From positions 310,001 through 374,000 of the IMG/VR virus record IMGVR_UViG_3300024239_000011: a stretch of 64,000 bases of DNA; one strand, 5' to 3'. This document shows positions 3 through 62,252 of this stretch, piece after piece. A program made the position numbers and the translations under genes. The notes under the pieces were generated by a model. The model had not been told where the DNA came from. It did no database searches and saw nothing but the letters and a program-made list of their open reading frames with translations. Within the stretch, counting starts at the first letter, position 1. Each line of letters opens with the position of its first letter.

Positions 3-1874
3 GCGGACTACTATGGCTATAATACTTTATATGCGTCATCTGCTGCTAGTGGATATCAGGAAAGCTCAAAGGTCACCTTGCACTTGTACGAGGACATGAC
101 GACTGGAAAATTGAGCTTGCACGTCATAAACGACATGTCCCAGGGATTGGGTGATACCGGTGGTGGTGCTAACTATGTTGTGGTGGATAATCTTCCGACA
201 GGACATCAAGTAATTGCAGCGGATGATCCTGGCGAGGCATGGTCTAATAGTACGACACAGGCTATTGGTAATTTTGGATGGGGTGATTGCTGCACTGATG
301 GTATGGTAATCGATAATATTCAAGATATGACTGCAATTATGATTACCTGTTCTGGGTATAGCGGCGTTGATCAATTCAAGCTTGCGAGCTATGATGGACG
401 CATTCAATATCTCCCTCTGACAACAACACTAACAATCGAGAAGATTGTCGAAGAGATAGACGAAACATTGTTTTTACAAGAAAACCCGGTCGCAGGGCAA
501 TACACAGGTTCTCAAGTTGTATCTTTTACTAAGGCGGCGAATGTTACTGCTAAAATCGCGCTCAATGCCACCCCATCCAATTCAAAAATTATCGCATATG
601 ACGCCAATGAAAATCCATTCATTGCGGTCGTTGATGACGGGCGTGGACGTGTAGTCTTTGATGGCGGGTTCCCTAGATACTACAACTCAAATTGGAACGG
701 GGTTGGGTATTACACTCTGCTCAAAGCAGAGCATATGTTTCTCTATCAATGCATGAACTGGATTGTCAATCCGGTAAAGGTTCGTAATGGTAATAAGTCA
801 ATACTAATATTCAATGACAGCATCACTGGTGAGAATTACCCACTCAGTTCGTTTAATACAACATTGGATGGGGTTGCCGCGATTGCCGGTTATACTCTTG
901 TACACAAGGATCGGTCAAGCTTTGGGGCAGGAGATCAAGTAACAATCCCATTTGTTGAACTTGATCAGTATGCAGCGGTTATTGTGTTTTCAACAAGATA
1001 CTGGGGTTCGCCCAGTATTACGGCAGAAACCGGGGCAAATTTCAAGATATACCGGGAAGCCGGAAACGGTATTATGGTGATCACGGACCATTCCGATGGC
1101 ACAACGTCATTTCAGCATACCGCGAACGTTATTGCAAACCAGTTTGGGGCTAATTTTTACGGGTCTGTGGATAGAACCCCCGTCGCAGTTTCGACGTTGA
1201 AGCAAAATTATGGCGTCCATCCTCTTTGGAATAATATCCCTGGAAGTATTGTTGGGGGAGGTAGTGAAGGTAATATATCCGTCACCAATTTCCCTGATTA
1301 TAATGACACGTCGTGGGTAATTGATCCGGCAGACATTTACACCTTTAATGCTCTTGTCCAAGACGAGATTGGGTTCTTCTATCATTTCTCATTTGGATAT
1401 GCAATTGGCGTTGATGAACCGATACAATTGAATTTTTCACCGGAGACATTGAAGGATGTGGTGAACGTTGATTTCTACGTCGCTCAATATGCCGGTACTA
1501 CGAGTGGGTTTGTGATTGATGCCATCGGAAATGTCCTCGGGTCATTTCGTAATGATGGGACGTTCTCAATGACGTGGTACGATCCAGATTTCGCGACCGT
1601 ACAATTGACGAAAGGTGATGCGCCAATTGTAATCAATATTCGTGTTACGCATCCCTTCTCGTATACCAAGAAAGTTTCTCTGATACGCTATGTGAAGGCG
1701 TGCAATCCTTTAAGTTCATCTTCAATTCTTGATGCACTTCATGGTGCTGAGTTGCGGGATCATCTTGGATCACCAGCAAGGATTATTCGTGACTTCCGCG
1801 ATATTACCAATAATGATCCAAACAAGAAACCATCATTTGCGCTGTCATATCTGTACTACTATTTGCTTCCGTGA
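3..1874 (+). CDS. Virion structural / tail-associated protein, 5'-truncated by window edge
   Basis: Frame is open from base 3 to the stop at 1874. Gly/Thr/Asn/Tyr-rich, with a VVFDGGFPRYYN motif I recall from jumbo-phage virion proteins. Lies upstream of a tail-fibre gene. Confidence 0.6.
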   Translation, partial: ADYYGYNTLYASSAASGYQESSKVTLHLYEDMTTGKLSLHVINDMSQGLGDTGGGANYVVVDNLPTGHQVIAADDPGEAWSNSTTQAIGNFGWGDCCTDGMVIDNIQDMTAIMITCSGYSGVDQFKLASYDGRIQYLPLTTTLTIEKIVEEIDETLFLQENPVAGQYTGSQVVSFTKAANVTAKIALNATPSNSKIIAYDANENPFIAVVDDGRGRVVFDGGFPRYYNSNWNGVGYYTLLKAEHMFLYQCMNWIVNPVKVRNGNKSILIFNDSITGENYPLSSFNTTLDGVAAIAGYTLVHKDRSSFGAGDQVTIPFVELDQYAAVIVFSTRYWGSPSITAETGANFKIYREAGNGIMVITDHSDGTTSFQHTANVIANQFGANFYGSVDRTPVAVSTLKQNYGVHPLWNNIPGSIVGGGSEGNISVTNFPDYNDTSWVIDPADIYTFNALVQDEIGFFYHFSFGYAIGVDEPIQLNFSPETLKDVVNVDFYVAQYAGTTSGFVIDAIGNVLGSFRNDGTFSMTWYDPDFATVQLTKGDAPIVINIRVTHPFSYTKKVSLIRYVKACNPLSSSSILDALHGAELRDHLGSPARIIRDFRDITNNDPNKKPSFALSYLYYYLLP

Positions 1875-3340: not shown

Positions 3341-4483
3341 TTGAAGGAAATTGATCTCTATCTCGGTGGCTATTTGCTGTGCTGTGGCGACGTATTCGTT
3401 GACCTCGGTGATAAGCGATATGCTGATGCCGTATCGATACAGCCGCTTGCCGGGCGGTATGGCATCTACAACGTTCATCTGGATTCGAACCAGTTGAGCC
3501 TTATCCCCGAGCTTGAGCAGACCTTCCAGGGCGCTACGGTTCGGTTCTACGTCCGCCTGATTGATGGGAACGTCAATTACGCCCCGGCGCCGAACGTCAC
3601 GTTCTTCACCGATGATCAAGCGATCCTTGAACAGATGAATGCCGCAAACAGTGGACTTAATGTGACGTTCTTGCTCACCCCGGATGTTGCAATACAGCCA
3701 GTTGTTTCCCTGATTGAAACTTCGCAAAACACGATTCGCCTCCAACTGCTAGTGGTGAAGAATGGTACGGCTGTGAAGTGGAACCCAGGTACCCTGGATG
3801 AGGTGTTCTTTCACGTCTTTGATCATGTGGTTCGCACGGGTAATCCGCGTATCGTATTCGATTATCCGAGTATGCGTGGCGCAGAATACCATTGCTGGTT
3901 GGATCAGTATTATTTTGTCAATGGTGATACTGAGATTCAATGTCCACTAGTTGGGCATCTTCGCCCCTATGATTTAAATTATGAGCCACTAACCACCGAA
4001 TGCGCGTTATGTGCATTTAATAGTAAGTGCTTCAACTGTCGATGGGCGAACTATCATAATACCGCATCTTTTGTGAATACTGGATGTCGTGATGTGTCTG
4101 AGTTTTACGACAAATCATTGACTACCGTACACAACGTGCAATTATTTCAAGTGTTCAGTCAGATGTATGATAAATTCCGCGAGCAACCGGAAGAAATGCT
4201 CAAGGTTTATACGTTTCTGATATCGGAGAACCGCCCTGATCAATGGATTTCGGTGCGGGAGGTATTTGGTGAATTGCTCAAGGAAGCAACCACCAAGGAT
4301 TATGCATTTGATTTTATGGTTTCTGTGATCTCGGCATATACCGATCCGCTTGCGGTATTTTCCACGGAAACTGTGCATACCATTGGGCGAAATATGTTTG
4401 AGATTGCCGAACCAAATCTCAATCAGCTTTTAGGATACCTATTCCTTATCGAATACGCGAAGATTTACCACGGGGAAGGTTAA
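3341..4483 (+). CDS. Degenerate radical SAM/SPASM-like protein (no CxxxCxxC)
   Basis: Has a SPASM-like CALCAFNSKCFNC..GC cluster but no N-terminal CxxxCxxC. First gene of the translationally coupled rSAM run. Confidence 0.5.
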   Translation: MKEIDLYLGGYLLCCGDVFVDLGDKRYADAVSIQPLAGRYGIYNVHLDSNQLSLIPELEQTFQGATVRFYVRLIDGNVNYAPAPNVTFFTDDQAILEQMNAANSGLNVTFLLTPDVAIQPVVSLIETSQNTIRLQLLVVKNGTAVKWNPGTLDEVFFHVFDHVVRTGNPRIVFDYPSMRGAEYHCWLDQYYFVNGDTEIQCPLVGHLRPYDLNYEPLTTECALCAFNSKCFNCRWANYHNTASFVNTGCRDVSEFYDKSLTTVHNVQLFQVFSQMYDKFREQPEEMLKVYTFLISENRPDQWISVREVFGELLKEATTKDYAFDFMVSVISAYTDPLAVFSTETVHTIGRNMFEIAEPNLNQLLGYLFLIEYAKIYHGEG

Positions 4484-5703
4484 TGCATAAGATCACCGGG
4501 AAGGTTAAGGGGACGGTCCTGTTCTATGATGAAAGGACCGCGATTCTCTACGACCATGACATGGTTCCGATCACCCAGACCCGTGACTATCAACGGTCTA
4601 AGTTTGGTGGTGCTATTGGTTTGTATAACATCGCCAGCGTGCAGTTTGGGCAATTCTGTAATCTCCGATGCACATACTGCCTGCAACGCACTATAGGAAG
4701 TGTTGATAGCGTTCATACCCCGGAGCGTGGTACGAAAATCCAACAGACGGTTGAGTATATTAGACGTACACTTGATCCGTGTATTCCAACCAAGGTTGAT
4801 TTGTGGGGCGGCGAACCGCTGTTCTATTGGGATGATCTGAAGGAGGTTGTCACCAGCCTGGAACCGCATGGGCAGATGCACTTCACGGTGTTTACCAATG
4901 GTATGGCACTCAAGGAAGAACATCTGGCGTGGTTCGCCAGCCGTCCATCCAAATTCACGGTGTCATTAAGCCATGATGGGTTTGGACAAGCCGCGCGTGG
5001 TAAAGACGTTCTGGACAAAGTGCTTGATTTGTTTGCTCACATAATTGCACCGAATATTGATTATTCAATTGCAACTACTGTGTCAAATACCAACCACGAC
5101 CTTCTTGCGCTGAATGATTTGTTCATGGTAGCACTGGATCGTCATGGGCTGCGGGATAGGGCGAAGTGGATCATTGAAATCCCACTGGTGTTCAGCGCAA
5201 AGGATGCTTTTGACCCCAAGCAGTTGCATAAGTTTACCGAGAACCTTAGGGCGTTCTTAACAGAAAATGAGCGCGGAAACCCACGCATTCTTAACAACAC
5301 CTTATGGTCTACTTTCGATCTGTTCGGTATATTTGCCCTGCTGAATCGTTTCAACAGCAAACATATACCAGGGTTCTACCGGTGCCATTTGTCCTATGAT
5401 AATGCCGTGGTTGTCAACACCAATGGTGAAGTGCTTCTCTGTCCTCATTCAACTTCTCCGACGCATGTGTTGGGGTCGGTTGACGGCGGTCAGGTCAAAC
5501 ACAAATCCGAGGTGATTCGCACCGGATATGATCCGCGTTGCGACGGTTGCCTCGTTCGTGATTTTTGTCGAAGCAGTTGCCCAATCATTGGTGGTACTTT
5601 TGAAGATAATCACAAAGTAATGTGGGCGTACTTCTCGACGTTGTACGAGTTCGCCTTTAAGCGTCTTCTTATGGAAGATGAAGTCGTAATCGAGCGAGTG
5701 TGA
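4483..5703 (+). CDS. Radical SAM / SPASM-domain protein
   Basis: CNLRCTYC, WGGEP, FTNG, SHDG, and C-terminal CDGCLVRDFCRSSCP. Confidence 0.92.
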   Translation: MHKITGKVKGTVLFYDERTAILYDHDMVPITQTRDYQRSKFGGAIGLYNIASVQFGQFCNLRCTYCLQRTIGSVDSVHTPERGTKIQQTVEYIRRTLDPCIPTKVDLWGGEPLFYWDDLKEVVTSLEPHGQMHFTVFTNGMALKEEHLAWFASRPSKFTVSLSHDGFGQAARGKDVLDKVLDLFAHIIAPNIDYSIATTVSNTNHDLLALNDLFMVALDRHGLRDRAKWIIEIPLVFSAKDAFDPKQLHKFTENLRAFLTENERGNPRILNNTLWSTFDLFGIFALLNRFNSKHIPGFYRCHLSYDNAVVVNTNGEVLLCPHSTSPTHVLGSVDGGQVKHKSEVIRTGYDPRCDGCLVRDFCRSSCPIIGGTFEDNHKVMWAYFSTLYEFAFKRLLMEDEVVIERV

Positions 5704-5704
5704 T

Positions 5705-6976
5705 ATGAAATTCAAGATCAGCGCCTTGGATACCCAAGCAACCATCATCTATGACAACGAAGCTAACATCTTTTTTGACGACACGGGAGTGCCGCTCACA
5801 CAAACCGCGAATTACATTCGTAGACGCGCGGCCAATTGGGACAAAACGCCGACGTGGCAAACATCCACTAATATTCGGCAAATCAAAATTTCTCTTGGGC
5901 AGTTCTGCAACTATTCCTGTACCTACTGTATGCAGAGCCAAATCGGTGAAGTGGGTAAGGAAGGTTTTGCGAAGAACGTCAACACCGACCGCATCATCGA
6001 AATCCTCAAGACCAATTACACGGTCCCCGACAACGTTCGCATCGAACTGTGGGGTGGTGAACCATTCTTCTATTGGGAAGATATGGTCAAGCTCATGGAG
6101 GCGTTCGATCATGAAACTGCTGAATTCCAGATTTTCACCAACGGATCAACTTTGCGACGCAAGCACCTTGATTTTTTCAAGGGTTTGAAGAGCCGTAAGA
6201 TCGATCTGGGGCTGTCGCACGACGCAGCCAAACAGGAAACCACCCGTGGTAAAAACTATCTCGCTGAAAACCTTGAACTGCTTCGCGAGTATCGTGAATT
6301 TACGAATATCCAACCTTTCTTGAGTGCCACGTTGACCAACGTGAATTATGATTTGTTGGAAATCAATGACTACTTTCGTGCTATGTTGGAGGCGCACTAC
6401 GGGGATACGAACCTGTGGATCAACTTCGACGTGCCGATGATTCACGAAAAGCAGAGTCTCAAGTTCTCACAAGACCAGCTTGATGGTTATAGCGCCAACT
6501 TGCGCAAGTACCTTCAAGCGTGTTGGGAGGATAAGAATCACGAGCGTATGATCCGTGGTTCGTTTTTTGAAGGCGGACAGCCAAGCTTCAAGCGCATCAT
6601 GGAATCCTTCCATTCCAAGGATATTGAGTCATTCATCAAATGTGCAGTGGGTTCGCCTAATTCGTTGACCCTCGATCTGGAAGGCAATGTTAAAACCTGC
6701 CCACACGCCGGGGATGCACATATATTTGGGAACGTCCTTGAGAGCGAAGACCACATTTTCAAGAATGATCCCACCTATGTGCGCACGGTAGAATACGACC
6801 AGTGTCAAAAGTGCTTGGTGCGCCGCTTCTGCCAAGGCGGTTGCCCTATCGTGATTGATAAAAACACGTGGTACTCGTATCACCATGTTTTGTGGACCCA
6901 CTACAGCACCATGTTCCAACTGGCTATGGAATTGTTGCTAGGTAGCAAAAAAGTGATGATCACAAATGTTGACTGA
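5705..6976 (+). CDS. Radical SAM / SPASM-domain protein
   Basis: CNYSCTYC, WGGEP, FTNG, CQKCLVRRFCQGGCP. Paralog of the preceding gene (shared N-terminal YD..I.D..VP.TQT). Confidence 0.92.
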   Translation: MKFKISALDTQATIIYDNEANIFFDDTGVPLTQTANYIRRRAANWDKTPTWQTSTNIRQIKISLGQFCNYSCTYCMQSQIGEVGKEGFAKNVNTDRIIEILKTNYTVPDNVRIELWGGEPFFYWEDMVKLMEAFDHETAEFQIFTNGSTLRRKHLDFFKGLKSRKIDLGLSHDAAKQETTRGKNYLAENLELLREYREFTNIQPFLSATLTNVNYDLLEINDYFRAMLEAHYGDTNLWINFDVPMIHEKQSLKFSQDQLDGYSANLRKYLQACWEDKNHERMIRGSFFEGGQPSFKRIMESFHSKDIESFIKCAVGSPNSLTLDLEGNVKTCPHAGDAHIFGNVLESEDHIFKNDPTYVRTVEYDQCQKCLVRRFCQGGCPIVIDKNTWYSYHHVLWTHYSTMFQLAMELLLGSKKVMITNVD

Positions 6977-8009
6977 TCTGTGCCGCAACGTCTCTATCAT
7001 CAATTTGTTGCTGACCAAAAAGTGCAACTACTCTTGCTCATATTGTCACCAGCTTCACAAAGACGATGTGCGACTTGCGGTATCACCACCCGAGCGTATC
7101 CACGAAATTGTGGAAAAGCTTGCTACGATCAATGATATCCCGAAGAACGTGCGATTTTTCGGCGGGGAAACGCTACTGCGTTTCCCCGATATCAAAGCCT
7201 ATTTTGAGGCATACCAACCGAACTATCCGGCACTGGGGTTTAGTGTTTATTCGAACGGATCACTCCTAACTCCTGACATGGGCGAATTCCTCGCCAAGAA
7301 CGGCGTAGACCTCACATTATCCATCGATGGGTATACAGAGGACGGTCAGCTTGAAAAGGACTATAAACGCCTAGAAACCGTCTTCCCGGCGATCTATCGC
7401 ATCTACGCCACTCACGGACGTATGATATCGGTGTCGGTGACCATCGACATTGCCAAAGTTCAGGCAGCGAAGAACCTGATGGTGTTGTTTACTCGGCGTT
7501 TTCCACGCACCAAACTTTTCATTTCTCCCGTTTTCCATTCGAAGGGTGATGGGAATACCCCATGGAGCATGGATGCGATTGATGACCTTCTGGGGTTTGT
7601 GGAGACCATCAACCAACAACGGGCAACACCGATCCTACAGGGATTGAATGTGATCTCATCGCCTCAGAAATGTATTAGCGTGGATTGGACATTGGCAGTG
7701 GACCTGTCGGGCGATCTGTCCAGTTGCTTCTTCACGATCACCGACAAGCTGACCTTCCCCGAGTACGTCTATGGGAACCTGTTGGACGACCGATTTGACG
7801 CGCCCCAATATGCTGCGATCTTGGAGCGGAAGCGTCAGATGTTCGACAACCCGTATTGCGCGGCATGCAGGTTCAAAGAAACCTGCATATCTTGCTCGAC
7901 GTGCGGGATGCTGTTCAACGAGAACCGGTGGTTCGAAAACGGCGAATGCAAGCCCTTGGTACATTTCTTGTCTGGGATGCATCACATGACCAGGGATGAA
8001 CCACTATGA
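6966..8009 (+). CDS. Radical SAM / SPASM-domain protein
   Basis: CNYSCSYC, FGGET, SNG, SIDG, CAACRFKETCISCSTC. Confidence 0.9.
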   Translation: MLTDLCRNVSIINLLLTKKCNYSCSYCHQLHKDDVRLAVSPPERIHEIVEKLATINDIPKNVRFFGGETLLRFPDIKAYFEAYQPNYPALGFSVYSNGSLLTPDMGEFLAKNGVDLTLSIDGYTEDGQLEKDYKRLETVFPAIYRIYATHGRMISVSVTIDIAKVQAAKNLMVLFTRRFPRTKLFISPVFHSKGDGNTPWSMDAIDDLLGFVETINQQRATPILQGLNVISSPQKCISVDWTLAVDLSGDLSSCFFTITDKLTFPEYVYGNLLDDRFDAPQYAAILERKRQMFDNPYCAACRFKETCISCSTCGMLFNENRWFENGECKPLVHFLSGMHHMTRDEPL

Positions 8010-9511
8010 ATGAAATTACCACTCTGCTGCGTAGCCGTGGGGTCTTTCAAGTGGTACTCACCAATCGCTGCAACTACAATTGCAACTACTGCTATCAGGA
8101 ACGCAATTTTAAGAAGTTCCCGAACGAGTTCGATAGCGCCGAGCAACTTGATCGTGTTTGCGGTAAATTGGTCGAACACCGCAAGGACGACACCCACTTC
8201 GAGTTCCAATTTCTCGGCGGCGAACCGCTGTTGAAGAAAAATGTTTTAATGAATTTTATGCGGGATTATGCATGGAAATATCCCAAGGTAGTATTCAACG
8301 TAATCACCAATGGTAAACTTCTCGATCACGAAACGGCAGTAGAGTATATCACGAGTCACCCTCTGGCGAAAATCTATTTTTCCTGTGACGGTATTGACCT
8401 GAATACCAATACGCATCCCAAGACCTGGGAACGTATTGCGATACTGTATGACCGGCTCTATCAACGCTTCCCAGAGCGCATTGGCATCATCCCGGTACTA
8501 ACCAGCAGTACCATCCCTAATTACGTTGCCCTATTGGATTTGATGGCGGAAAAATATCCACTCAGTCATGTTCATGCATTGGCCGCAATCAGCGACCATT
8601 TCGATACCAACTTCGAATGGTCGCCCGAGCATATTCGCAGCGTCGGGGAACAAATCCGTCCGTTCTTCCTGAAACACCCAGGTTGGACCATTGACTATTA
8701 CATGTGGGATTATCCGCTCGATTCCTTCCTCGATTCGGCGGACGACCCGGCGGTGATGCCAAACGGTGACATACATCTGATGCCATCGTATTTTATGGGT
8801 GAAGCAGCAGACCTAAGCAATAAACCAGACTTCAATGTAATCACCGGGGAAGTATACCCGTACCTTGCCCAGAAACAGATCAAAGAGCGGTTGATTCAAG
8901 CGGCGAAAACTGCCAACTCGCGCTGTCAGACATGCCCGATTTCGGGGCATTGTCTTCCGATGAAATTCTTCACATTGGTACACTTACCGGACGAGCAAAT
9001 TACCGCAGAGACCGTGGTTGATGCAGAATGTAACACCATGCTTGATTTCTTCTGGAATATGCCGGTGTTCGCACATTTTCCCACCGGCATATTTCAGAAC
9101 CTTCAACAGCAAGTCCAACTGTTCCAGAAGTATCGGACACGATATGTTCGGGCGCTTTATGTTTTAGACCGTTTGGCTATTCCAGTTCTGCAACTTCTAA
9201 ATGACGATTTTGTTGAGAATATCGAAAAACTTGGCGTTGGAAAATATTTCTATCTAGATATGTATGGGGTTTCCCGCCATACCGAAGAAGTGCGCTCCGC
9301 ATATAATACTCCATTGCGGGATATTTTTTGTCATTTCAAGCATCATCCGAAACGTCGTCCACTTCACCCGGCATTGGTATGTAAAGTTGTTCGTGAATTG
9401 TTGGATAAACCGACCGACCATTTGTTTGAGTTAATTATTCCGAACCTTTACCACAAGGTCTATTATGGTCCAACGTGGCATTGGTCGTTTGACGACACTT
9501 ATAGGTGGTAA
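8006..9511 (+). CDS. Radical SAM protein with partial SPASM and C-terminal extension
   Basis: CNYNCNYC, LGGEP, ITNG, SCDG, CQTCPISGHC. Confidence 0.9.
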   Translation: MNEITTLLRSRGVFQVVLTNRCNYNCNYCYQERNFKKFPNEFDSAEQLDRVCGKLVEHRKDDTHFEFQFLGGEPLLKKNVLMNFMRDYAWKYPKVVFNVITNGKLLDHETAVEYITSHPLAKIYFSCDGIDLNTNTHPKTWERIAILYDRLYQRFPERIGIIPVLTSSTIPNYVALLDLMAEKYPLSHVHALAAISDHFDTNFEWSPEHIRSVGEQIRPFFLKHPGWTIDYYMWDYPLDSFLDSADDPAVMPNGDIHLMPSYFMGEAADLSNKPDFNVITGEVYPYLAQKQIKERLIQAAKTANSRCQTCPISGHCLPMKFFTLVHLPDEQITAETVVDAECNTMLDFFWNMPVFAHFPTGIFQNLQQQVQLFQKYRTRYVRALYVLDRLAIPVLQLLNDDFVENIEKLGVGKYFYLDMYGVSRHTEEVRSAYNTPLRDIFCHFKHHPKRRPLHPALVCKVVRELLDKPTDHLFELIIPNLYHKVYYGPTWHWSFDDTYRW

Positions 9512-10890
9512 TCATGGACAACCCTTTCAGTCAGGTCTATTGGATCAATCTGCTCCTGACTAATAAATGTAACAAGCAGTGTTCGTACTGCTATGAGCAG
9601 CATAAAGCCGAGTTTGAACGGTCGTACATCAATGCACATCGTGTGGATGAAATCTGCGCGAAGATGGACACCATGAACTCGCTTCAGAAAACCCTCCATT
9701 TTTTTGGCGGCGAACCCATGCTGAAGTTCGACACCATCATGGAGTACATGCGGGCATCGTCCCATAAATACCCCACATTGTCTTACGTGATTATCACCAA
9801 CGGCACGCTACTGACTCCTCAGAAATTCGAGGATTTCGTTTCGCACGGCGGCTCATTCTACATTTCCTGCGACGGCTGGGGGATCGATAACACTGACATC
9901 ACAACCAAGGATTTCAGTGCTATCAAGGATGTGGTTGAGGCATGCTTCCCGGTGGTCGCAGCCTATGATAAACGCATTACGTTCGACGTAGTTGTGCATC
10001 CCCGTGAGGTCGCGTCGTTCGGGCGGTTTATGCAGTACCTCGCCGGAAGTCCGCATTTCGAGCAAATCAATATCCACATCAAGCCATTGCTATACAGCAT
10101 GACCGATGGGTTGGTGCGCTGGGATGACGCAGCGATTAATCAATTCTTACAGGAATGTATGAATGCCATTGTGAAATCAAAGGGCATCAATTTCGAGATA
10201 GAAGGGTTCTACGAGAAGTCATGGGGCACGTGCATGACCATGGCAAACAACCTGAATGTTGATGTTGAGGGTAATTTTTCAGGGTGTTATTTTCTACTGA
10301 ACCAACATAAAGCCACCTCGGCATTCGATGATGCCATTTTTGGCAACATTCTAACCGGCGAGATTGATACTGCCAAAATCGCCAACTTTAAACGCCTGGA
10401 ACAGGAACTCTACCAGTCCTCTAAATGCCAATCTTGCGTATTGAACCCAAAATGCTTCCAGTGCAGTGCTGGACTGTACACAACCCTTGGAAAGTGGTAC
10501 GACAACGACAAGCATTGCGAAATCGTTATCCCATTCATCCAACGGTTGAATTCCTTCCAAGCCATGAAAGAGGATGCATATATCATTGGCTGCCTGAAGG
10601 AGAAAATCCAGGAACATGGGTCTGAGTGGTTTGTGACTCGCCTTAAGTATTGGACGACAGTTCACATGCAAGCGACGTTGCTGGAAATTTGTAATGCACA
10701 TATCCCAGCACAAAACATTATGGCGGGAAATGCGCCACTTGATTTGGGTCAGTGGCTCAGTGATGCGGGGGCAAAGCAAGTAGCAGAGCTTCATCACATT
10801 TTCACGCCTGCATTGGCTGATCTTTCTGCTCAAGATCAGTTTACGCTTTGCGTTGCGCGTGTGATTGAGAAAGAACATCCCAAAACCTAA
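9505..10890 (+). CDS. Radical SAM / SPASM-domain protein with C-terminal extension
   Basis: CNKQCSYC, FGGEP, ITNG, SCDG, CQSCVLNPKCFQC. Confidence 0.92.
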   Translation: MVIMDNPFSQVYWINLLLTNKCNKQCSYCYEQHKAEFERSYINAHRVDEICAKMDTMNSLQKTLHFFGGEPMLKFDTIMEYMRASSHKYPTLSYVIITNGTLLTPQKFEDFVSHGGSFYISCDGWGIDNTDITTKDFSAIKDVVEACFPVVAAYDKRITFDVVVHPREVASFGRFMQYLAGSPHFEQINIHIKPLLYSMTDGLVRWDDAAINQFLQECMNAIVKSKGINFEIEGFYEKSWGTCMTMANNLNVDVEGNFSGCYFLLNQHKATSAFDDAIFGNILTGEIDTAKIANFKRLEQELYQSSKCQSCVLNPKCFQCSAGLYTTLGKWYDNDKHCEIVIPFIQRLNSFQAMKEDAYIIGCLKEKIQEHGSEWFVTRLKYWTTVHMQATLLEICNAHIPAQNIMAGNAPLDLGQWLSDAGAKQVAELHHIFTPALADLSAQDQFTLCVARVIEKEHPKT

Positions 10891-10898
10891 TAGAAAAC

Positions 10899-10935
10899 CC
10901 TCCATGGACTGCTAAATACGTGCAGTCCATGGAGG
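10899..10935 (+). promoter_or_regulatory. Late promoter inside an RBS-sequestering hairpin
   Basis: Perfect 14-bp inverted repeat cctccatggactgc / gcagtccatggagg. TAAATA is in the loop and the GGAGG RBS is in the 3' arm. Confidence 0.75.
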
Positions 10936-10941
10936 TGCTTG

Positions 10942-11805
10942 ATGGTGGTAACGGTAATCAGCGGCGGTGATAATTCATCCAGCTATGCAAAAGACAAAGC
11001 TTTTGATAATTCGATAACGACATCCTGGCGAAGCTTACAGACCGGCGTTGATGTTGTAAATGCCGCATGGCTCGGTCAAGATTTCGGTATTCCAGTTTAC
11101 GTGATTTCTGCGAGCTACCGTAAAGGGTCATACGATCCGGCATCGGTTGCGATACAGTACAGTGATGATGGATTGTCATGGACGAATACTGGTGTAACGT
11201 TTACCAGTTTTAGCAACGCGGTGGAAAAGAAAAGTATAGCAGTGGGTACACCGCATCGTTACTGGCGTGCAATTGCCACAGGTGCCACGGCAGGTACCAA
11301 CCCATGGGAAATTGTAGAATTGACTTTCGGCATCGCCACAACAGGATTACCCAAGTACATAACGAAGGTAGTGTCTCTTGGCGCAATAACCAATTTGAAC
11401 GCAACGGCATTGAAGGCACGGGTGAATACGTTGAAGACAAAGTTTGTTCAGAACGGCATTCTCACGGCAGTAGATATGCAGGAATTTTGGAGCATTCTTC
11501 GGGATTTCAGCCAACACTACCACCCATACACGGAAACGAAGCAGGCGATTGATAATATTCAGGCTGGTATTGATGCTATTACCGATTCAACAACAAAGAC
11601 CAATGCCCAGAACGCCGCAAACCCTCATAAGGTAACCGTTTTGAGTAACACCGGTCCTATATTATTTGACAATCCGATCACATCTGGGTTTTCTGTGGGG
11701 TTTGTATTGGATAAAGTGACAATGAATACGTTTATTGAAATGATAAATGCATCCCAACGTCATAAACATAGTGTAACTGATCGTTTTTTTGACACAGCAG
11801 TCTAA
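10942..11805 (+). CDS. Discoidin (F5/8 type C)-like domain protein with two HxH fibre-like modules; probable virion protein
   Basis: KAFD..TSW..WLGQDFG..IQYSDDG..W..HRYWR..WEIVEL, then QHYHPYTE and RHKHSVTD. Preceded by a late promoter. Confidence 0.65.
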   Translation: MVVTVISGGDNSSSYAKDKAFDNSITTSWRSLQTGVDVVNAAWLGQDFGIPVYVISASYRKGSYDPASVAIQYSDDGLSWTNTGVTFTSFSNAVEKKSIAVGTPHRYWRAIATGATAGTNPWEIVELTFGIATTGLPKYITKVVSLGAITNLNATALKARVNTLKTKFVQNGILTAVDMQEFWSILRDFSQHYHPYTETKQAIDNIQAGIDAITDSTTKTNAQNAANPHKVTVLSNTGPILFDNPITSGFSVGFVLDKVTMNTFIEMINASQRHKHSVTDRFFDTAV

Positions 11806-11816
11806 GGAAGTCCGAT

Positions 11817-12200
11817 ATGGCTGAACAAAATGTTCCTTCGAATACCGATGCAGCAACGTATTCGACCACAGCAGCGGAAACCCCGCAAATCACCGCACCG
11901 CAAATACTGACGGCCAACATGTTCCAAAACATGTTGAATGTGCTGGAAAATGCTCTCGGTAGCCATACCCATACGCATCAAGATACCGCATTGAATGCGT
12001 GTACGTGTTGGAACTATACACCGTGTGACCGTTTAGTGACCAACCTTACCTGTGTTGATTGTTCGCCTGGAAATTGTGCTGGGCAGTGCCGCACGTGTGG
12101 TACCGCGCAATGTGGGACTTATGAGTGTGCCTGTGCTGATGTTCAGGGATGGGTTGATAATACTCCTGGGGGTAACGGGACACCCTGCACACTGCCTTGA
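11817..12200 (+). CDS. Cys-rich protein, putative radical SAM substrate (HxH leader plus 12-Cys core)
   Basis: Cys-free N-terminal half ending SHTHTHQD, then 12 Cys in about 66 aa. Adjacent to six rSAM-like genes. Confidence 0.65.
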   Translation: MAEQNVPSNTDAATYSTTAAETPQITAPQILTANMFQNMLNVLENALGSHTHTHQDTALNACTCWNYTPCDRLVTNLTCVDCSPGNCAGQCRTCGTAQCGTYECACADVQGWVDNTPGGNGTPCTLP

Positions 12201-12278
12201 ATAATTACCTAAACAAATTGACCAGAAACCTCGAACCATGCGATTTTGGACGAGGTTCTGGTTAATGAAGGTATTAGG

Positions 12279-13788: not shown

Positions 13789-14172
13789 ATGGTCAATTTT
13801 GATATGCGCATTCTGGTAGTCGATGACTATGCTACGATGCAGAAGATTGAGCGCAATTTGCTCAAGCAGATTGGTTTCGGGAATGTTGATACCGCAAATG
13901 ACGGCTCCCAGGCACTTCAAATGCTTCGGTTGCAGCACTATGATCTTATCCTGTCCGATTGGAACATGGAGCCGATGACCGGTCTGATGTTGTTGCGCGA
14001 AGTGCGCAATGACCCTGCCCTGAAGCATATCCCATTCATCATGGTAACTGCGGAAACTAAACAGGAAAATGTGATCGCTGCTCGGGAAGCAGGGGTGTCC
14101 AACTATATAATTAAACCCTTTACGGCGGATACATTAAAGAAGAAACTACAGTCGGTTATCGGGGATTTCTAA
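13789..14172 (+). CDS. cheY: Chemotaxis response regulator CheY
   Basis: Single receiver domain: ILVVDD, phosphoacceptor in SDWNMEPM, MVTAE, YIIKPF. GAGG RBS. Confidence 0.92.
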   Translation: MVNFDMRILVVDDYATMQKIERNLLKQIGFGNVDTANDGSQALQMLRLQHYDLILSDWNMEPMTGLMLLREVRNDPALKHIPFIMVTAETKQENVIAAREAGVSNYIIKPFTADTLKKKLQSVIGDF

Positions 14173-37221: not shown

Positions 37222-38559
37222 TTAGAACCGCATGATCTCATTCATTTTAAGAAGATCGTTACCGGTGAACTTCACCGTTACCATGGTCAGTGGTCCACCC
37301 TTCCCGCATCCAGTATCCGCGAACACAACCTTCCCGCCATTGGGGTTGGTGTAGATGTCCGGGTTTCCATCCACCGCACGGCTGTAATCGTGCCCGACAA
37401 TGGCGATCTGGTGTGCCGGAATGTTGTCCATCCAGTCATAAAGACGGGTAGGAAACTCTTTACCGGTCGCCGGATCGACAGTCTTGGTCCCATCCGTTTG
37501 ACCAAACATTGCCATGTTTTCCAACATGCCGTGTAACCGATGGGCATAACTGTTCAACATACCGGGATGAATGGCACCGTGGACGAAAGTCAGGTTACCG
37601 ATCCGCAGATGATGGCGTGCAAGACTGTACAACGCCATGAACTTACGTTCCCAGGATTGGCGCTGTTCCATCGGCAAAGCTTCGATCACGTTGAAAGTTT
37701 CACGGGTACCATGGGTGAACATGACCGTGATGTTGTCTTCAGTGCGCTCGTAACCTTCGACTTCGGCTTTCCCAAGCTGCTCGATGACCTTCTTGTATTT
37801 CCGCTCGTGATTACCCAGGATCATCATGCCGCGTCCGGTAGTCACCAAATCGTACATAAAGTCAACGGTACCCACCGGGTCGGGTCCATAGTCCACCACA
37901 TCACCCAACTGAACCACGAACAGGTTGTTCTCCTTGGCGTATTCCAAGGCATCCATCAACTGCTCAGACATATTGTGGACATCACCGATCACCGCGATAC
38001 CGGCAAACCCCTTCTCCTTGATCCACGTCAGTAAATCATAGTGATTGGGCTTTTGTACGACCACGAATTCATCGGTGCGCGCATCAACGACCAAGCGGTT
38101 CGGGGCATTATCGCCTCGAAGGATCGCCTGCTCATTTGCCTTGAATGTCTCGTGATGTGCTTCCACGAGCGTCTTGTCCTTGATAATCACACCATGACGC
38201 CACCCTTGTGTCTTCATTTTCTCGGGCAACGGGCGGTCATATACCAGATAAACCACAGGTACACCAGCATCAACGCCAATTTTAGCCGAGGATTCGCGGT
38301 CGCGCGTCTTCAGGTGCGTTGCATCAATAACGACACGTTCACCAACAGAAAGTTTCAACGCGGCACGGTGGCGCACTTCGTCAAAGACGATTTCGTTGAT
38401 ATCCTGGCGCATGTGGTCATTGACCAATTCGGCACGGATTGCGTCAGTCGAGATTACTTCATATGGACGAAAATGCTGCTCACAAAGGGTGGATTTCCCC
38501 GCACCTGATGGACCTACTAACAATACAAGTGCGTGAAGTGGAATAGATTTTACAGACAC
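37222..38559 (-). CDS. Polynucleotide kinase-phosphatase (P-loop kinase plus metallophosphoesterase)
   Basis: GPSGAGKS, STDAIR; GDVH, GDVVDYGP, GNHE, VHG, DTGCGKGG. The GTG start is a judgement call. Confidence 0.88.
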   Translation of the reverse strand: MSVKSIPLHALVLLVGPSGAGKSTLCEQHFRPYEVISTDAIRAELVNDHMRQDINEIVFDEVRHRAALKLSVGERVVIDATHLKTRDRESSAKIGVDAGVPVVYLVYDRPLPEKMKTQGWRHGVIIKDKTLVEAHHETFKANEQAILRGDNAPNRLVVDARTDEFVVVQKPNHYDLLTWIKEKGFAGIAVIGDVHNMSEQLMDALEYAKENNLFVVQLGDVVDYGPDPVGTVDFMYDLVTTGRGMMILGNHERKYKKVIEQLGKAEVEGYERTEDNITVMFTHGTRETFNVIEALPMEQRQSWERKFMALYSLARHHLRIGNLTFVHGAIHPGMLNSYAHRLHGMLENMAMFGQTDGTKTVDPATGKEFPTRLYDWMDNIPAHQIAIVGHDYSRAVDGNPDIYTNPNGGKVVFADTGCGKGGPLTMVTVKFTGNDLLKMNEIMRF

Positions 38560-38622
38560 GATACAAAACCTTTTTCTTTTCTTGGCCCTCCTTATACCGT
38601 GAACAATTTTCAAAGATCAATT

Positions 38623-55528: not shown

Positions 55529-56743
55529 TTAGAAAGTATACCAATTCAACGGAATCAGATCGCGGATGCTCTCGATCTTGGTTGAGGTGCCTGTGTTCTT
55601 CAGCACGAAGTCACGGACCATAGCGAAGGCGTTCTTGCCATCCCAAACTTGGAACGACAACGGACGAAGGCGGCTGTCCAACTTCTGCGAAGCCCCCAGT
55701 GCGTATTCCTTCTTCGCCTGCTTTTCATCGCCGCCCACTGCCTTCAGAATCTCTTCTTTGGCGGTCGCGACGTAGGTTTCCAACTGCTTGGCTTGTTTGG
55801 CGATTTCATGGTTCAACGCATCGGTGAATGCACTCAGTCGGTTGCGATCAGCTTCCTCCATGAATGCCATGGCGTCATCCATACTCTCGCTGAGAACGAG
55901 TTCCCACACGTTCTTCTCAATGGCGATAAGTTCTTTCGCCTTGTGAATACGGCAGTAATGTTCGTTCTTGACCTTGTACATCCGCCCATCAGCAAAGCGG
56001 ATCACATAACCTTCGCCTTCAGTTTCCCCCTTTGTTCTCTCCAAGAAAGCCTGGATATCTGCAATACTCGACCCGAACACCTCGACTACCGGAATACCAA
56101 ACGGCTGTGCCATCTGCACCATGTCTTCATAGGGCACGTAGTAGCCCTTGATCATATGTCGAATAGCGGTCAACACCAGCATGTCTTCCGGGTAATCTAC
56201 GACAATTCTTTGTTTACGCGAACACCACTCAAAGATAGGGGTAAAGCCGTTCTCCAACATGGATGCCATGAAATTTACGTAGCCAATTTCATCATGCCCG
56301 AACGCAAATTCCTGCGCAGGGATAGCAACGTCAGTCGGACCCATCTTGGTGCAGAGGATCATCTTTCCGCCCAGAATCATGGGATGGATCATGCTGCCAT
56401 CCATCTTCGCCATGATGCGGAGATCAGACGACCAATTGACCTGATGCGGTTGAGTTTCCTCGCGTTCACCCACATTGAAGAATTTGTGATAAACACGTGC
56501 CAAAATCTTCCCCGTGGCAGAGCAGAACTTGATGCCACGAGCTTCCCGACGAACAATCGCCTTTAGACGATCACGGGGATCATCTATAGAAATCAAATCA
56601 GGGAAAGTATGGGCGAAGTTGACCGCGTAATTCACAACGGTAAAGCCGTCGCGCTCGCCTACAATCCACTCTTCACCACGGACGCCATTCTCGTCGGTCA
56701 ACGCCCACAACAGGTCGTCTATATGCTGTATTTGCGGAAACAC
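55529..56743 (-). CDS. T4 Rnl1-type RNA ligase
   Basis: REARGIKF, YHKFFNVGE, KMDGSMI, TPIFEW, EGYVI, YKVK. Confidence 0.9.
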   Translation of the reverse strand: MFPQIQHIDDLLWALTDENGVRGEEWIVGERDGFTVVNYAVNFAHTFPDLISIDDPRDRLKAIVRREARGIKFCSATGKILARVYHKFFNVGEREETQPHQVNWSSDLRIMAKMDGSMIHPMILGGKMILCTKMGPTDVAIPAQEFAFGHDEIGYVNFMASMLENGFTPIFEWCSRKQRIVVDYPEDMLVLTAIRHMIKGYYVPYEDMVQMAQPFGIPVVEVFGSSIADIQAFLERTKGETEGEGYVIRFADGRMYKVKNEHYCRIHKAKELIAIEKNVWELVLSESMDDAMAFMEEADRNRLSAFTDALNHEIAKQAKQLETYVATAKEEILKAVGGDEKQAKKEYALGASQKLDSRLRPLSFQVWDGKNAFAMVRDFVLKNTGTSTKIESIRDLIPLNWYTF

Positions 56744-60656: not shown

Positions 60657-60657
60657 A

Positions 60658-62192: not shown

Positions 62193-62252
62193 GGTGTTCT
62201 CCATAGTCAGGTGGACTTTTAGTTGTCCACCTGACTATTTATACAACTTCCG

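What the first reader, a model, noticed from the sequence alone, without database searches (positions are those of the whole stretch)
3341..12200. Six-gene radical SAM/SPASM array beside tail-fibre genes with a 12-Cys candidate substrate: RiPP-like modification of a virion part
Seen: five genes with CxxxCxxC, GGE(P/T) and C-terminal Cys clusters plus one degenerate copy, all overlapping or abutting. They are followed by a discoidin-like protein and a 127-aa protein whose C-terminal half has 12 Cys (CTC..C..CVDC...C...C..C....C....CAC..C). No protease or exporter gene is adjacent, and the flanks are fibre genes. The enzymes follow a sigma70-type promoter, while the two small genes follow a late promoter with an RBS-occluding hairpin, so the enzymes would be made before the substrate. 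Established: SPASM rSAM enzymes install thioether and other crosslinks in Cys-rich peptides (sacti- and ranthipeptides). Inference: a multiply crosslinked peptide displayed on the virion, for example a fibre tip or adhesin, rather than a secreted RiPP.
Basis: partly seen in the sequence, partly recalled or inferred. Interest (0 to 1): 0.87.

Follow-up and report, generated by a model that had tools for sequence, protein, structure and literature searches.

The report
Radical-SAM maturases for phage fibre tips
A giant phage carries five radical-SAM enzymes next to two small proteins, one cysteine-rich, and the same enzyme-plus-cysteine-repeat pairing recurs beside or inside tail-fibre genes of many unrelated phages, which suggests that phages chemically cross-link the tips they use to grip their hosts.

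Summary
The core observation holds. Five abutting radical SAM/SPASM genes (4483-10890) are followed by a 287-aa CBM32/discoidin-like protein and a 127-aa protein with 12 Cys. The sixth gene (3341-4483) shares only a 4-Cys motif, the sigma-70 match is at chance level, and only the upstream flank is fibre-like.

Comparative genomics supports the reading. The two small proteins belong to two conserved families, which I call T1 and T2:
- T1 is a 63-89 aa peptide with a helix-HxH module and a C-terminal CxCxC run.
- T2 has two such modules and almost no Cys.

T1 and T2 co-occur with orthologous rSAM clades r1, r2 and r3 in about 20 phage loci, flanked by tail-fibre genes. The window has r1 x3 and r3 x2.

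More broadly, 64 of 89 loci with this rSAM family hold a co-directional (N/D)CxCxC protein within 6 kb. The run lies at the C-terminus, or directly before a self-cleaving Hint or S74 chaperone domain of proteins that match tail-fibre families.

The likely function is rSAM cross-linking of fibre-tip or adhesin proteins, probably Cys-Asn/Asp thioethers. Neither the chemistry nor virion location is shown. Enzyme number does not track Cys number. I found no paper describing this.

The parts
78..1874 (+). 598-aa virion structural protein (context, upstream flank)
   Evidence: phrog_11065 'virion structural protein', E 4.9e-76. Relatives occur in phiKZ-like jumbo phages and Salicola phage SCTP-2.
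1944..3284 (+). 446-aa tail-fibre-like protein (context, upstream flank)
   Evidence: Matches tail-fibre PHROGs (phrog_19602 and others). It clusters with the 'fam1' fibre proteins that flank the T1/T2 cassette in 12 loci, and fam1 members match many tail-fibre PHROGs.
3341..4483 (+). 380-aa protein of unknown role with a SPASM-like CxxCx5CxxC motif (residues 221-233). It abuts the first rSAM gene. It is not shown to be a degenerate rSAM.
   Evidence: No Pfam, NCBIfam or PHROG family. hhalign finds only a 25-column motif match. The family HMM does not hit it.
4483..5703 (+). Radical SAM/SPASM enzyme, clade r3 (the T2-adjacent clade)
   Evidence: CNLRCTYC and GGEP motifs; PF04055 E 7.5e-11. Falls in a supported clade with the r3 orthologues (99/96).
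5705..6976 (+). Radical SAM/SPASM enzyme, clade r3
   Evidence: CNYSCTYC and GGEP motifs; PF04055; SPASM TIGR04085 at 40 bits against a cut-off of 27. Orthologue of RP12 ORF079 (E 1e-59). Tree.
6966..8009 (+). Radical SAM/SPASM enzyme, clade r1 (the T1-adjacent clade), with the full 7-Cys SPASM pattern
   Evidence: CNYSCSYC and GGET motifs. Best NCBIfam match is PapB (E 1e-22, far below its cut-off). r1 clade support 100/95.
8006..9511 (+). Radical SAM enzyme, divergent member of clade r1, with only part of the auxiliary-cluster Cys set
   Evidence: CNYNCNYC and GGEP motifs; PF04055. Very long branch in the tree (4.04), so its placement is unsure.
9505..10890 (+). Radical SAM/SPASM enzyme, clade r1, with the 7-Cys SPASM pattern (an alternative ATG start at 9514 is used by another gene caller)
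   Evidence: CNKQCSYC and GGEP motifs; PapB-like E 1e-18. Closest to RP12 ORF076 (E 2e-35).
10899..10935 (+). Perfect 14-bp stem-loop between the enzyme genes and the T2 gene. Its 3' arm contains the GGAGG ribosome-binding site of the ATG at 10942.
   Evidence: Sequence. Fold -31.1 kcal/mol, z -5.85, with 0 of 200 shuffles folding as well.
10942..11805 (+). T2-family protein. The N-terminal half is CBM32/discoidin-like. The C-terminal half (about residues 145-287) carries two helix-HxH modules (H192/H194 and H274/H276, plus D280). It is a candidate second substrate or partner.
   Evidence: Pfam F5_F8_type_C E 7.6e-6 and CBM32 E 0.013. Module HMM hits of 34.6 and 33.7 bits (these were training instances). 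Alignment with 17 T2 proteins shows the invariant His/Asp. AF2 pLDDT is 80-90 for the T2 half.
11817..12200 (+). T1-family protein with an expanded Cys region. It has a T1 N-terminus, a helix (residues 33-47), HTH (H50/H52), then a 12-Cys C-terminal region (residues 62-124). It is the candidate Cys substrate of the r1-clade enzymes.
   Evidence: Alignment with 18-19 T1 peptides: invariant M1, H, H, D and the first CxC. Purifying selection with all Cys kept. AF2 is confident only for the helix.
12217..12265 (+). Second strong stem-loop just after the T1 stop codon. Together with the first hairpin it brackets the T2-T1 gene pair.
   Evidence: Sequence. Fold -28.8 kcal/mol, z -6.30.

Best explanation
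The region is an enlarged, rearranged version of a conserved phage cassette. In it, radical SAM/SPASM enzymes post-translationally modify two small partner proteins encoded next to tail-fibre genes.

Shown:
- T1 is a short protein with a conserved N-terminus, an amphipathic helix, an HxH-x-(Y/F)-x-(D/E) motif and a C-terminal CxCxC run. It sits directly in front of the r1-clade enzyme.
- T2 has two helix-HxH modules and almost no Cys. Where it lies next to an rSAM gene (L010, L018, L019, L026, L046), that gene is r3.
- The window has three r1-clade and two r3-clade enzymes, a T1 whose Cys region has grown to 12 Cys, and a T2 fused to a carbohydrate-binding-like domain.

Inferred:
- The r1 enzymes use SAM-derived radicals to cross-link the T1 Cys residues to neighbouring residues. 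Cys-to-Asn/Asp/Gln/Glu thioethers of the ranthipeptide kind are the most likely products.
- The r3 enzymes modify T2 near its His/Tyr/Asp motifs.
- The products are not exported peptides. They stay as a rigid, protease-resistant piece of the virion's host-recognition apparatus, such as a fibre tip or adhesin.
- The two hairpins around the T2-T1 pair probably set the amount or timing of substrate relative to enzyme.
For: 1. Five genuine rSAM/SPASM genes.
2. A 25-residue module HMM built from 8 instances found, in 241,000 residues of six-frame translation, only the rSAM-adjacent small ORFs plus one untrained hit. That hit is an unannotated T1 ORF in Ralstonia phage RP12 (25 bits; the reversed-sequence maximum was 9.4).
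3. In 80 further IMG/VR loci, 34 hits scored at least 12 bits against none in the reversed control. After one iteration, 41 ORFs in 22 loci were found, with T1 and T2 nearly always together.
4. Gene order is conserved: T2, fam7, fam4, T1, r1, r2, fam2, r3, DUF3050, a tail-fibre assembly protein, then tail fibres.
5. The tree has three supported orthologue clades. The window's enzymes fall in r1 (x3) and r3 (x2).
6. In 64 of 89 loci of the wider rSAM family, a co-directional ORF with [ND]CxCxC or CxCxCxC lies within 6 kb. There are 69 such ORFs on the + strand against 12 on the - strand.
7. The repeat is 0-12 residues from the C-terminus, or ends exactly where a Hint domain (JWF gp28, L060, L054, L063) or a Peptidase_S74 chaperone (L090) begins. 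The carrier proteins hit tail-fibre PHROGs.
8. T4-like relatives place the rSAM between gp38 adhesin and tail-fibre chaperone genes.
9. Residues between the Cys are N 40%, D 12%, Q 10%, E 4% and A 26%. The residue before the first Cys is N in 65% of runs. These are the acceptor types of known Cys-thioether rSAM enzymes (from my own knowledge of PapB, NxxcB and QhpD).
10. The best NCBIfam match of the r1-clade enzymes at 6966 and 9505 is PapB.
11. No T1 relative was found in 185,579 cellular genomes with the pattern used, and no protease or exporter is present.
Against: - No chemistry is shown. Every match to a characterised maturase family is far below its cut-off.
- Virion location is not shown. 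The RP31 virion proteome did not list the T2 homologue or the adjacent fibre-like proteins, although only 32 proteins were detected.
- Accessory genes often gather near fibre genes in phages, so adjacency alone is weak.
- The window lacks four members of the canonical cassette (r2, fam2, fam4, DUF3050) and its T1 Cys region is irregular. It has only two CxC pairs, and its similarity to another Cys-rich family is weak (E 0.001).
- rSAM number does not follow Cys number.
- The AF2 model of the T2 half has no fold match in the PDB (E >= 0.95), so a fibre-like structure is not demonstrated.
- Many loci are related by descent, so the 64/89 count overstates the number of independent observations. 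I count at least five separate contexts: the window, RP12, the uncultured T1/T2 phages, JWF-type siphophages, and the T4-like gp38 loci (in these the rSAM sits among adhesin and fibre-chaperone genes, but no CxCxC run was found).
Confidence: 0.6

Rival explanations
1. The cassette makes a free RiPP-type natural product that is not part of the virion. Examples would be an antimicrobial, a metal-binding or signalling peptide released at lysis, or an intracellular inhibitor of a host function. It would sit near fibre genes only because that region collects accessory genes.
For: - The architecture looks like a RiPP cluster: a short precursor with a conserved N-terminal part and a Cys-rich C-terminal part, encoded next to SPASM maturases.
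- AF2 sees only a helix and an unstructured Cys region in T1.
- T2 and the neighbouring proteins are absent from the RP31 virion proteome.
- Pelagimyophage host-recognition clusters hold many unrelated accessory genes, including rSAM cassettes (PMC7029224).
Against: - No leader protease, exporter or immunity gene appears in the window or in the conserved cassette.
- In other branches of the same rSAM family, the CxC repeat is covalently part of tail-fibre proteins, just before self-cleaving Hint or S74 domains.
- The window's T2 is fused to a CBM32-like binding domain.
- A tail-fibre assembly protein and fibre genes are conserved neighbours.
Confidence: 0.2
2. The HxH and CxC motifs are metal-binding structural elements of small trimeric or hetero-oligomeric fibre pieces, like the HxH metal sites of T4 fibres. 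The Cys residues are not cross-linked. The rSAM enzymes would carry out a different reaction, such as epimerisation, C-C or C-O cross-links on Tyr/His, Cys-to-formylglycine oxidation, or methylation, or they would act on another substrate.
For: - Invariant HxH follows an amphipathic helix in every T1 and T2.
- Alternating Cys in a strand would all face one side, as alternating His do in T4 fibre tips (my own knowledge).
- T2 lacks a CxC run and has almost no Cys, yet has its own conserved rSAM clade, r3, so at least one enzyme must do non-thioether chemistry.
- An anSME-type full-length match exists for the enzyme at 4483 (E 3e-14).
- A B12-binding rSAM occurs in locus L010.
Against: - The tight, family-wide pairing of CxC runs with SPASM enzymes, together with the N/D/Q/E bias between the Cys, is what thioether maturases would need.
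- Metal binding alone does not explain why an rSAM gene accompanies the repeat in so many lineages.
- The two ideas are not exclusive.
Confidence: 0.15
3. The array is a set of decaying or neutral duplicates with no current common function, and the 127-aa protein is an unrelated orphan.
For: The window's enzymes sit on long branches (1.0-4.0 changes per site). The enzyme at 8006 has lost some auxiliary-cluster Cys. The 127-aa protein has only one near-identical relative in 1.8 billion representative proteins.
Against: - All five keep CxxxCxxC and GGE and have intact reading frames.
- Synonymous changes far outnumber non-synonymous ones in the two genes compared, 11817-12200 and 5705-6976.
- The whole array is identical in gene order on independent assemblies.
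- T1 and T2 membership is clear in the alignments.
Confidence: 0.03

Closest known systems
PapB / freyrasin-type ranthipeptide maturation (radical SAM/SPASM, Cys-to-Asp beta-thioethers), and NxxcB (Cys-to-Asn)
   Same: Both involve SPASM rSAM enzymes next to a short Cys-rich substrate. One enzyme can make many links iteratively. The acceptor residues (Asp, Asn) are the ones enriched between the Cys here. PapB is the best NCBIfam match for two of the window's enzymes.
   Different: Scores are 49-81 bits against a cut-off of 340, so these are not family members. No RRE domain was detected. There is no protease or exporter. The Cys spacing is CxC rather than Cx3D. The substrates are fibre-associated proteins or fibre C-termini in phages, not secreted bacterial peptides.
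QhpD / QhpC (quinohemoprotein amine dehydrogenase gamma-subunit cross-linking)
   Same: A SPASM rSAM enzyme installs several Cys-to-Asp/Glu thioethers in a small protein that stays as a structural subunit of a larger complex rather than being released. This is the nearest precedent for modifying a structural part.
   Different: The match to TIGR03906 is weak (up to 55.7 bits against a cut-off of 453). QhpC is a periplasmic enzyme subunit, not a virion part, and has no helix-HxH module or CxC run.
Metal-binding HxH sites of trimeric phage fibres (T4 gp12 and gp37 tips; from my own knowledge)
   Same: HxH follows a helical or extended segment in receptor-binding fibre pieces. T2 (two modules) plus T1 (one module) would supply three HxH pairs, the number that forms one octahedral site in a trimer.
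   Different: No sequence or fold relationship was detected. The stoichiometry idea is untested. Those fibres are not known to need rSAM enzymes.
Self-cleaving C-terminal domains of tail fibres and spikes (Peptidase_S74 intramolecular chaperone; Hint domains)
   Same: In relatives (L090, L060, JWF gp28, L054, L063), the CxC run ends exactly where the S74 or Hint domain starts. Cleavage would therefore leave the repeat as the mature fibre C-terminus.
   Different: The window's T1 and T2 are free-standing small proteins without such a domain.
Radical SAM gene cassettes noted in the host recognition cluster of pelagimyophages (PMC7029224) and in marine T4-like genomes (PMC5332604)
   Same: Both papers record rSAM genes among tail-fibre genes of large marine myophages. 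These are probably the same or a related family.
   Different: Both papers only note their presence. Neither proposes a substrate, a CxC repeat or a function.

Membership tests
Radical SAM superfamily (PF04055) | CxxxCxxC cluster motif, a GGE SAM-binding motif, and a Pfam score above the gathering threshold | tested here: met
   Met for the five ORFs from 4483 to 10890 (40-52 bits against 29.5; motifs listed). Not met for 3341-4483, which has no motif and no hit.
SPASM subgroup of radical SAM enzymes | C-terminal 7-Cys pattern (Cx9-15Gx4C ... Cx2Cx5Cx3C ... C) for two auxiliary 4Fe-4S clusters | tested here: inconclusive
   The full 7-Cys set is present in the enzymes at 6966 and 9505. Six Cys are present in those at 4483 and 5705 (TIGR04085 scores 26.9 and 40.0 bits against a cut-off of 27). 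Only a partial set is present in the enzyme at 8006. Cluster binding cannot be tested here.
PapB-family ranthipeptide maturase (NF047865) | Score at or above the curated equivalog cut-off (340 bits) | tested here: not met
   The best score is 80.7 bits. The relationship is resemblance only.
Anaerobic sulfatase maturase (TIGR03942) | Score at or above the cut-off (349 bits) and a sulfatase substrate with a C/SxPxR motif nearby | tested here: not met
   The best score is 52.8 bits. No sulfatase gene lies in the region.
Canonical RiPP biosynthetic cluster | A precursor peptide with a leader and a core, encoded next to the maturase | tested here: met
   T1 has a conserved N-terminal part and helix, followed by a Cys-rich core, directly adjacent to the rSAM genes.
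Canonical RiPP biosynthetic cluster | A leader protease and an exporter (or another release route) in the cluster | tested here: not met
   None is found in the window or in the conserved cassette of L019 and L017.
Canonical RiPP biosynthetic cluster | A peptide-recognition (RRE) domain on the maturase or a partner | not tested
   The Pfam runs returned no RRE-type family. The r3 enzymes have a conserved extension of about 55 aa at the N-terminus whose role is unknown.
Phage T1/T2/rSAM cassette (defined here) | A T1 peptide with helix-HxH-x-(Y/F)-x-(D/E) followed by a C-terminal CxC run | tested here: met
   The window's 127-aa protein aligns with 19 T1 sequences, with invariant M1, H50, H52, D56, C62 and C64. 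It differs in having a Cys region about 60 aa long instead of 5-9 aa.
Phage T1/T2/rSAM cassette (defined here) | A T2 protein with two helix-HxH modules | tested here: met
   Residues 145-287 of the 287-aa protein align with 17 T2 proteins. H192, H194, H274, H276 and D280 are invariant.
Phage T1/T2/rSAM cassette (defined here) | The full enzyme set: r1, r2, fam2 (a divergent CxxGCxxC protein), r3, plus fam4 and DUF3050 | tested here: not met
   The window has r1 x3 and r3 x2 only. It has no r2, fam2, fam4 or DUF3050. It is a variant of the cassette, not the canonical form.
Discoidin / CBM32 (F5/8 type C) domain | A Pfam score above the gathering threshold (28.2 bits) | tested here: inconclusive
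   The score is 26.5 bits, E 7.6e-6. The match to the CBM32 of an alginate lyase has E 0.013. The AF2 model of this half has low confidence because the alignment has no depth there.
Virion structural protein / fibre tip | Detection in purified virions or attachment to a fibre | not testable with these tools
   The evidence is indirect only: neighbourhoods and CxC runs inside fibre proteins of relatives. The RP31 proteome is negative but shallow.

The most novel reading that the evidence does not exclude
A widespread and so far undescribed class of phage host-recognition parts. The C-terminal tips of tail fibres, or small tip proteins, carry (N/D)CxCxC runs that dedicated phage radical SAM/SPASM enzymes convert into multiply cross-linked knots. 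This would be enzymatic, RiPP-style chemistry built into a virion. In the T1/T2 branch, which includes this giant phage, a 1:1 T1:T2 complex would form a three-helix module capped by three HxH pairs around a metal, with the cross-linked Cys tail and (here) a carbohydrate-binding domain as the exposed adhesin.
Probability: 0.4. Interest if true: 0.9.

Novelty: new variant of a known kind. Interest (0 to 1): 0.82.

Why it matters
Post-translational cross-linking by radical SAM enzymes is known for secreted bacterial peptides and for one enzyme subunit, but not for virus particles. If phage fibre tips or adhesins are matured this way, several things follow:
- It would explain the unexplained radical SAM cassettes seen in the host-recognition regions of marine and jumbo phages.
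- It would add a new kind of chemistry to receptor-binding proteins, giving rigid, protease- and redox-resistant tips.
- It would reveal a large reservoir of maturase-substrate pairs. I found at least 571 enzyme relatives in IMG/VR and at least 319 T2 clusters.
- It would mean that such fibres cannot be produced in functional form without their enzymes and anaerobic Fe-S chemistry.
- It would make testable the question of why some phages carry many Fe-S enzymes.

Tried and rejected
- DNA search of the region against 50,697 phage records gave no match.
- tblastn of the 127-aa protein against phages gave nothing.
- A word-indexed search of 5.8 billion proteins and a full phmmer search of 1.8 billion representatives found only a 98% identical twin, plus one weak repetitive 1576-aa protein that matches the helix-HxH stretch.
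- Pattern scans with small T1 alignments found only RP12 itself in IMG/VR and nothing in cellular genomes. One alignment was too diverse to use.
- I tested 3341-4483 as a degenerate rSAM by BLAST, hhalign and the family HMM. Only a Cys-motif match appeared, so the claim is not upheld.
- I tested the homology of RP12 ORF075 to the discoidin-like protein, and of RP12 ORF078 to 3341-4483. Neither was supported.
- The promoter scan found no enrichment over shuffles.
- The co-variation of rSAM number with Cys number was rejected (rho -0.35).
- Profile searches of T1 and T2 against PDB sequences found nothing.
- The AF2 model of T2 has no PDB fold match. The AF2 model of T1 is uninformative beyond one helix.
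- A gp38-like N-terminus of the 'T3' Cys-rich proteins is only weakly suggested (E 0.017), so I make no claim.
- Nine literature searches found no description of the system.

Full report
WHAT IS IN THE WINDOW. The window is part of IMG/VR contig IMGVR_UViG_3300024239_000011 (543 kb). On the + strand, the region reads in this order:
- a 598-aa virion structural protein (phrog_11065);
- a 446-aa tail-fibre-like protein;
- a 380-aa protein of unknown family (3341-4483);
- five radical SAM genes that overlap or abut (4483-5703, 5705-6976, 6966-8009, 8006-9511, 9505-10890);
- a 287-aa protein (ATG at 10942, ending at 11805);
- a 127-aa protein (11817-12200).

All five enzymes have CxxxCxxC and GGE(P/T), and all pass the Pfam Radical_SAM threshold. 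All belong to phrog_1802. Two have the full 7-Cys SPASM pattern, two have six of the seven Cys, and one (8006) has only a partial set. Their best NCBIfam matches are peptide maturases, with PapB first for two of them, but every score is far below the family cut-off.

The 380-aa protein is not detectably a radical SAM protein. It shares only a CxxCx5CxxC stretch with the SPASM region.

The 127-aa protein has 12 Cys, all between residues 62 and 124. A 96% identical twin contig shows 9 synonymous against 3 non-synonymous codon changes with every Cys kept. The enzyme gene at 5705 shows 38 against 6. These are therefore genes under selection.

SIGNALS AROUND THE GENES. The sigma-70-like site before 3341 matches 9 of 12 positions, and such sites are no more common here than in shuffles. 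The hairpin before the 287-aa gene is real. It has a 14-bp perfect stem (-31.1 kcal/mol, z -5.85), and its 3' arm holds the GGAGG in front of the ATG. A second strong hairpin (-28.8 kcal/mol, z -6.3) follows the stop codon of the 127-aa gene. The two small genes are thus bracketed by stem-loops. I could not test a 'late promoter'. Downstream of the region there are only unknown small ORFs and a CheY-like receiver, so only the upstream flank is fibre-like.

THE TWO SMALL PROTEINS BELONG TO CONSERVED FAMILIES. The nearest cultured relatives of the enzymes are in Ralstonia jumbo phages RP12 and RP31 and in Achromobacter siphophage JWF.

While reading the small genes beside those enzymes, I noticed a repeated stretch of about 25 residues: an amphipathic helix followed by H-x-H-x-(Y/F)-x-(D/E). 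It occurs:
- once in the 127-aa protein;
- twice in the 287-aa protein;
- twice in RP12 ORF074;
- in two small ORFs of metagenome locus L010.

I built an HMM from these eight instances and searched 241,000 residues of six-frame translation. It found only those instances and one untrained hit, at 25 bits against a reversed-sequence maximum of 9.4. The hit is an unannotated 65-aa ORF in RP12 whose module is followed by an NCNCNCAC tail.

A scan of IMG/VR with an alignment of the enzymes returned 80 loci, out of at least 571 relatives. In these loci the HMM gave 34 hits of at least 12 bits, against none in the reversed control. After one iteration it found 41 ORFs in 22 loci. They fall into two families, which I call T1 and T2:
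- T1 (63-89 aa) has a conserved start, the module, then ..YDDYxT(V/N)CxCxC(xCxC)xRGT-hydrophobic at the C-terminus, with 3-5 Cys in the run.
- T2 (113-154 aa) has two modules, the second at the C-terminus. It has no CxC run and almost no Cys.

The window's 127-aa protein aligns as a T1 whose Cys region is about 60 residues long. Residues 145-287 of the 287-aa protein align as a T2, with invariant H192, H194, H274, H276 and D280. Its N-terminal half is weakly CBM32/discoidin-like. T2 is common in metagenomes, with at least 319 clusters.

THE CASSETTE AND THE ENZYME CLADES. In about 17 loci the gene order is: T2, fam7, fam4, T1, rSAM r1 (about 580 aa), rSAM r2 (about 370 aa), fam2, rSAM r3 (about 440 aa), DUF3050. 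A small protein that matches 'L-shaped tail fibre assembly' and tail-fibre proteins then follow. Fam2 is about 356 aa, has an invariant CxxGCxxC motif, and is probably a fourth, divergent radical SAM enzyme. RP12 has the same set, and its ORF080 is the DUF3050 protein.

A maximum-likelihood tree of 58 enzymes gives three well-supported orthologue clades. The window's enzymes at 6966, 8006 and 9505 fall in r1 (100/95). Those at 4483 and 5705 fall in r3 (99/96). None falls in r2. All five sit on long branches, so details are unsure.

T1 lies directly before r1 in most loci. T2 lies directly before r3 in five loci (L010, L018, L019, L026, L046). This suggests that r1 acts on T1 and r3 acts on T2. 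The window lacks r2, fam2, fam4 and DUF3050. Its 446-aa fibre protein clusters with the fibre family (fam1) that flanks the cassette in 12 loci.

THE WIDER PATTERN LINKS THE Cys REPEAT TO FIBRES. In 64 of 89 loci holding this enzyme family, an ORF co-directional with the enzyme contains [ND]CxCxC or CxCxCxC within 6 kb. There are 69 such ORFs on the enzyme's strand against 12 on the other. The run lies in one of three places:
- 0-12 residues from the C-terminus;
- ending exactly at the first Cys of a Hint domain of about 175 aa (JWF gp28, L060, L067, L069, L054, L063);
- immediately before a Peptidase_S74 intramolecular chaperone (L090).

Both kinds of domain remove themselves, so the repeat would become the mature C-terminus. 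The carrier proteins in L060, L090 and L073 match tail-fibre PHROGs.

T4-like relatives place the enzyme between gp38 adhesin genes and the tail-fibre assembly chaperone.

Among 74 distinct runs, the residues between the Cys are N 40%, A 26%, D 12%, Q 10% and E 4%. The residue before the first Cys is N in 65% of runs.

MECHANISM PROPOSED. What is shown is the gene content, the family relationships, the neighbourhoods and the motif statistics. The rest is inferred.

- The r1-clade SPASM enzymes cross-link the Cys of T1. From my own knowledge of PapB (Cys-Asp), NxxcB (Cys-Asn) and QhpD (Cys-Asp/Glu), the acceptor bias points to non-alpha thioethers. One enzyme can make many links.
- The r3 clade must do something else, because T2 has almost no Cys. 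Its conserved His, Tyr and Asp are candidate sites.
- The products stay with the virion's host-recognition apparatus. The grounds are that no protease or exporter is present, that the repeat is part of real fibres in other branches, that fibre and fibre-assembly genes are conserved neighbours, and that the window's T2 carries a binding-type domain.
- One further idea is untested. T2 (two modules) plus T1 (one module) could form a three-helix unit whose three HxH pairs bind one metal, as in trimeric T4 fibre tips.

WHAT WEAKENS THE CASE.
- No chemistry or location is shown.
- The RP31 virion proteome (32 proteins) lists neither the T2 homologue nor the neighbouring fibre-like proteins.
- Accessory genes often gather near fibre genes (PMC7029224).
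- The number of enzymes does not follow the number of Cys (rho -0.35). Single-enzyme loci have partners with up to 20 Cys. The window's five enzymes are therefore not explained by its 12 Cys.
- AF2 gives a confident model only for the T2 half (pLDDT 80-90), and that model has no PDB fold match. For T1, only the helix is confident.
- Many of the loci are related by descent. I count at least five independent contexts.

NOVELTY. The enzyme type and the enzyme-plus-Cys-rich-substrate logic are known, so this is a new variant of a known kind. The target (phage fibre tips or adhesins), the T1 and T2 families, the helix-HxH module and the CxC-run rule appear undescribed in the literature I could search. 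Two papers note radical SAM cassettes among fibre genes or in marine T4-like genomes without explanation (PMC7029224, PMC5332604). Other searches found nothing relevant.

Noticed in passing
L101 (ENA ERZ27245855 k141_178484), the whole array; window 3341-12200: The same gene array, with an identical 287-aa protein, lies on an 869,618-bp contig in another assembly. The IMG/VR contig is 543 kb. Either this phage genome is much larger than recorded, or that assembly is concatenated or chimeric.
   Followed up: partly
L001:6948-7145 (Ralstonia phage RP12, record about 82888-83085, between ORF074 and ORF075): An unannotated 65-aa T1 gene ending in NCNCNCAC-TRGSL. The public annotation misses it. 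RP12 ORF074 is the T2 partner.
   Followed up: yes
L006, L008, L012, L013 (T4-like contigs): A gp38-adhesin N-terminal ORF ends in a poly-Gly run. A fatty-acid-desaturase-like gene and the rSAM gene follow. Then comes a Gly-rich small ORF starting ..RLVACGAC... It looks like a gp38 adhesin split around two enzyme genes.
   Followed up: no
L052, L062, L085, L086, L088, L089, L094 (ORF ending about 60-130 bp before the rSAM start): A third family of 132-143-aa proteins with 18-20 Cys (many NC dipeptides, ending ..CACACW) lies directly upstream of a single rSAM. The N-terminus is weakly gp38-like (E 0.017). The Cys half is weakly similar to the window's 127-aa protein (E 0.001).
   Followed up: partly
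L072:4628-5508: Three tandem small ORFs (93-98 aa) each end in NCNCNC(NC), upstream of one rSAM gene. These would be multiple substrates for one enzyme.
   Followed up: no
L017:5922-6989, L019:5465-6610, RP12 ORF078 (phrog_36229): A conserved cassette protein of about 356 aa has an invariant CxxGCxxC near its N-terminus in all 17 loci. Pfam does not recognise it. It is probably a divergent radical SAM enzyme.
   Followed up: partly
window 13789-14172 (+): A stand-alone CheY-like response-regulator receiver domain (PF00072, E 4e-28) is encoded by the phage, 1.6 kb downstream of the array.
   Followed up: no
window 55529-56743 (-), 37222-38613 (-), 59364-62204 (-): An RNA ligase of the 'tail fibre attachment catalyst' PHROG, a polynucleotide kinase/phosphatase-like protein, and two HNH/homing-endonuclease-like genes lie elsewhere in the window.
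   Followed up: no
L092:11444-12718: A 425-aa protein has a C-terminus that looks like a T1 fused onto a larger protein (helix, HSH, ..DY.., then NCKCDCNCDCNC). It lies 4.4 kb downstream of the rSAM.
   Followed up: no
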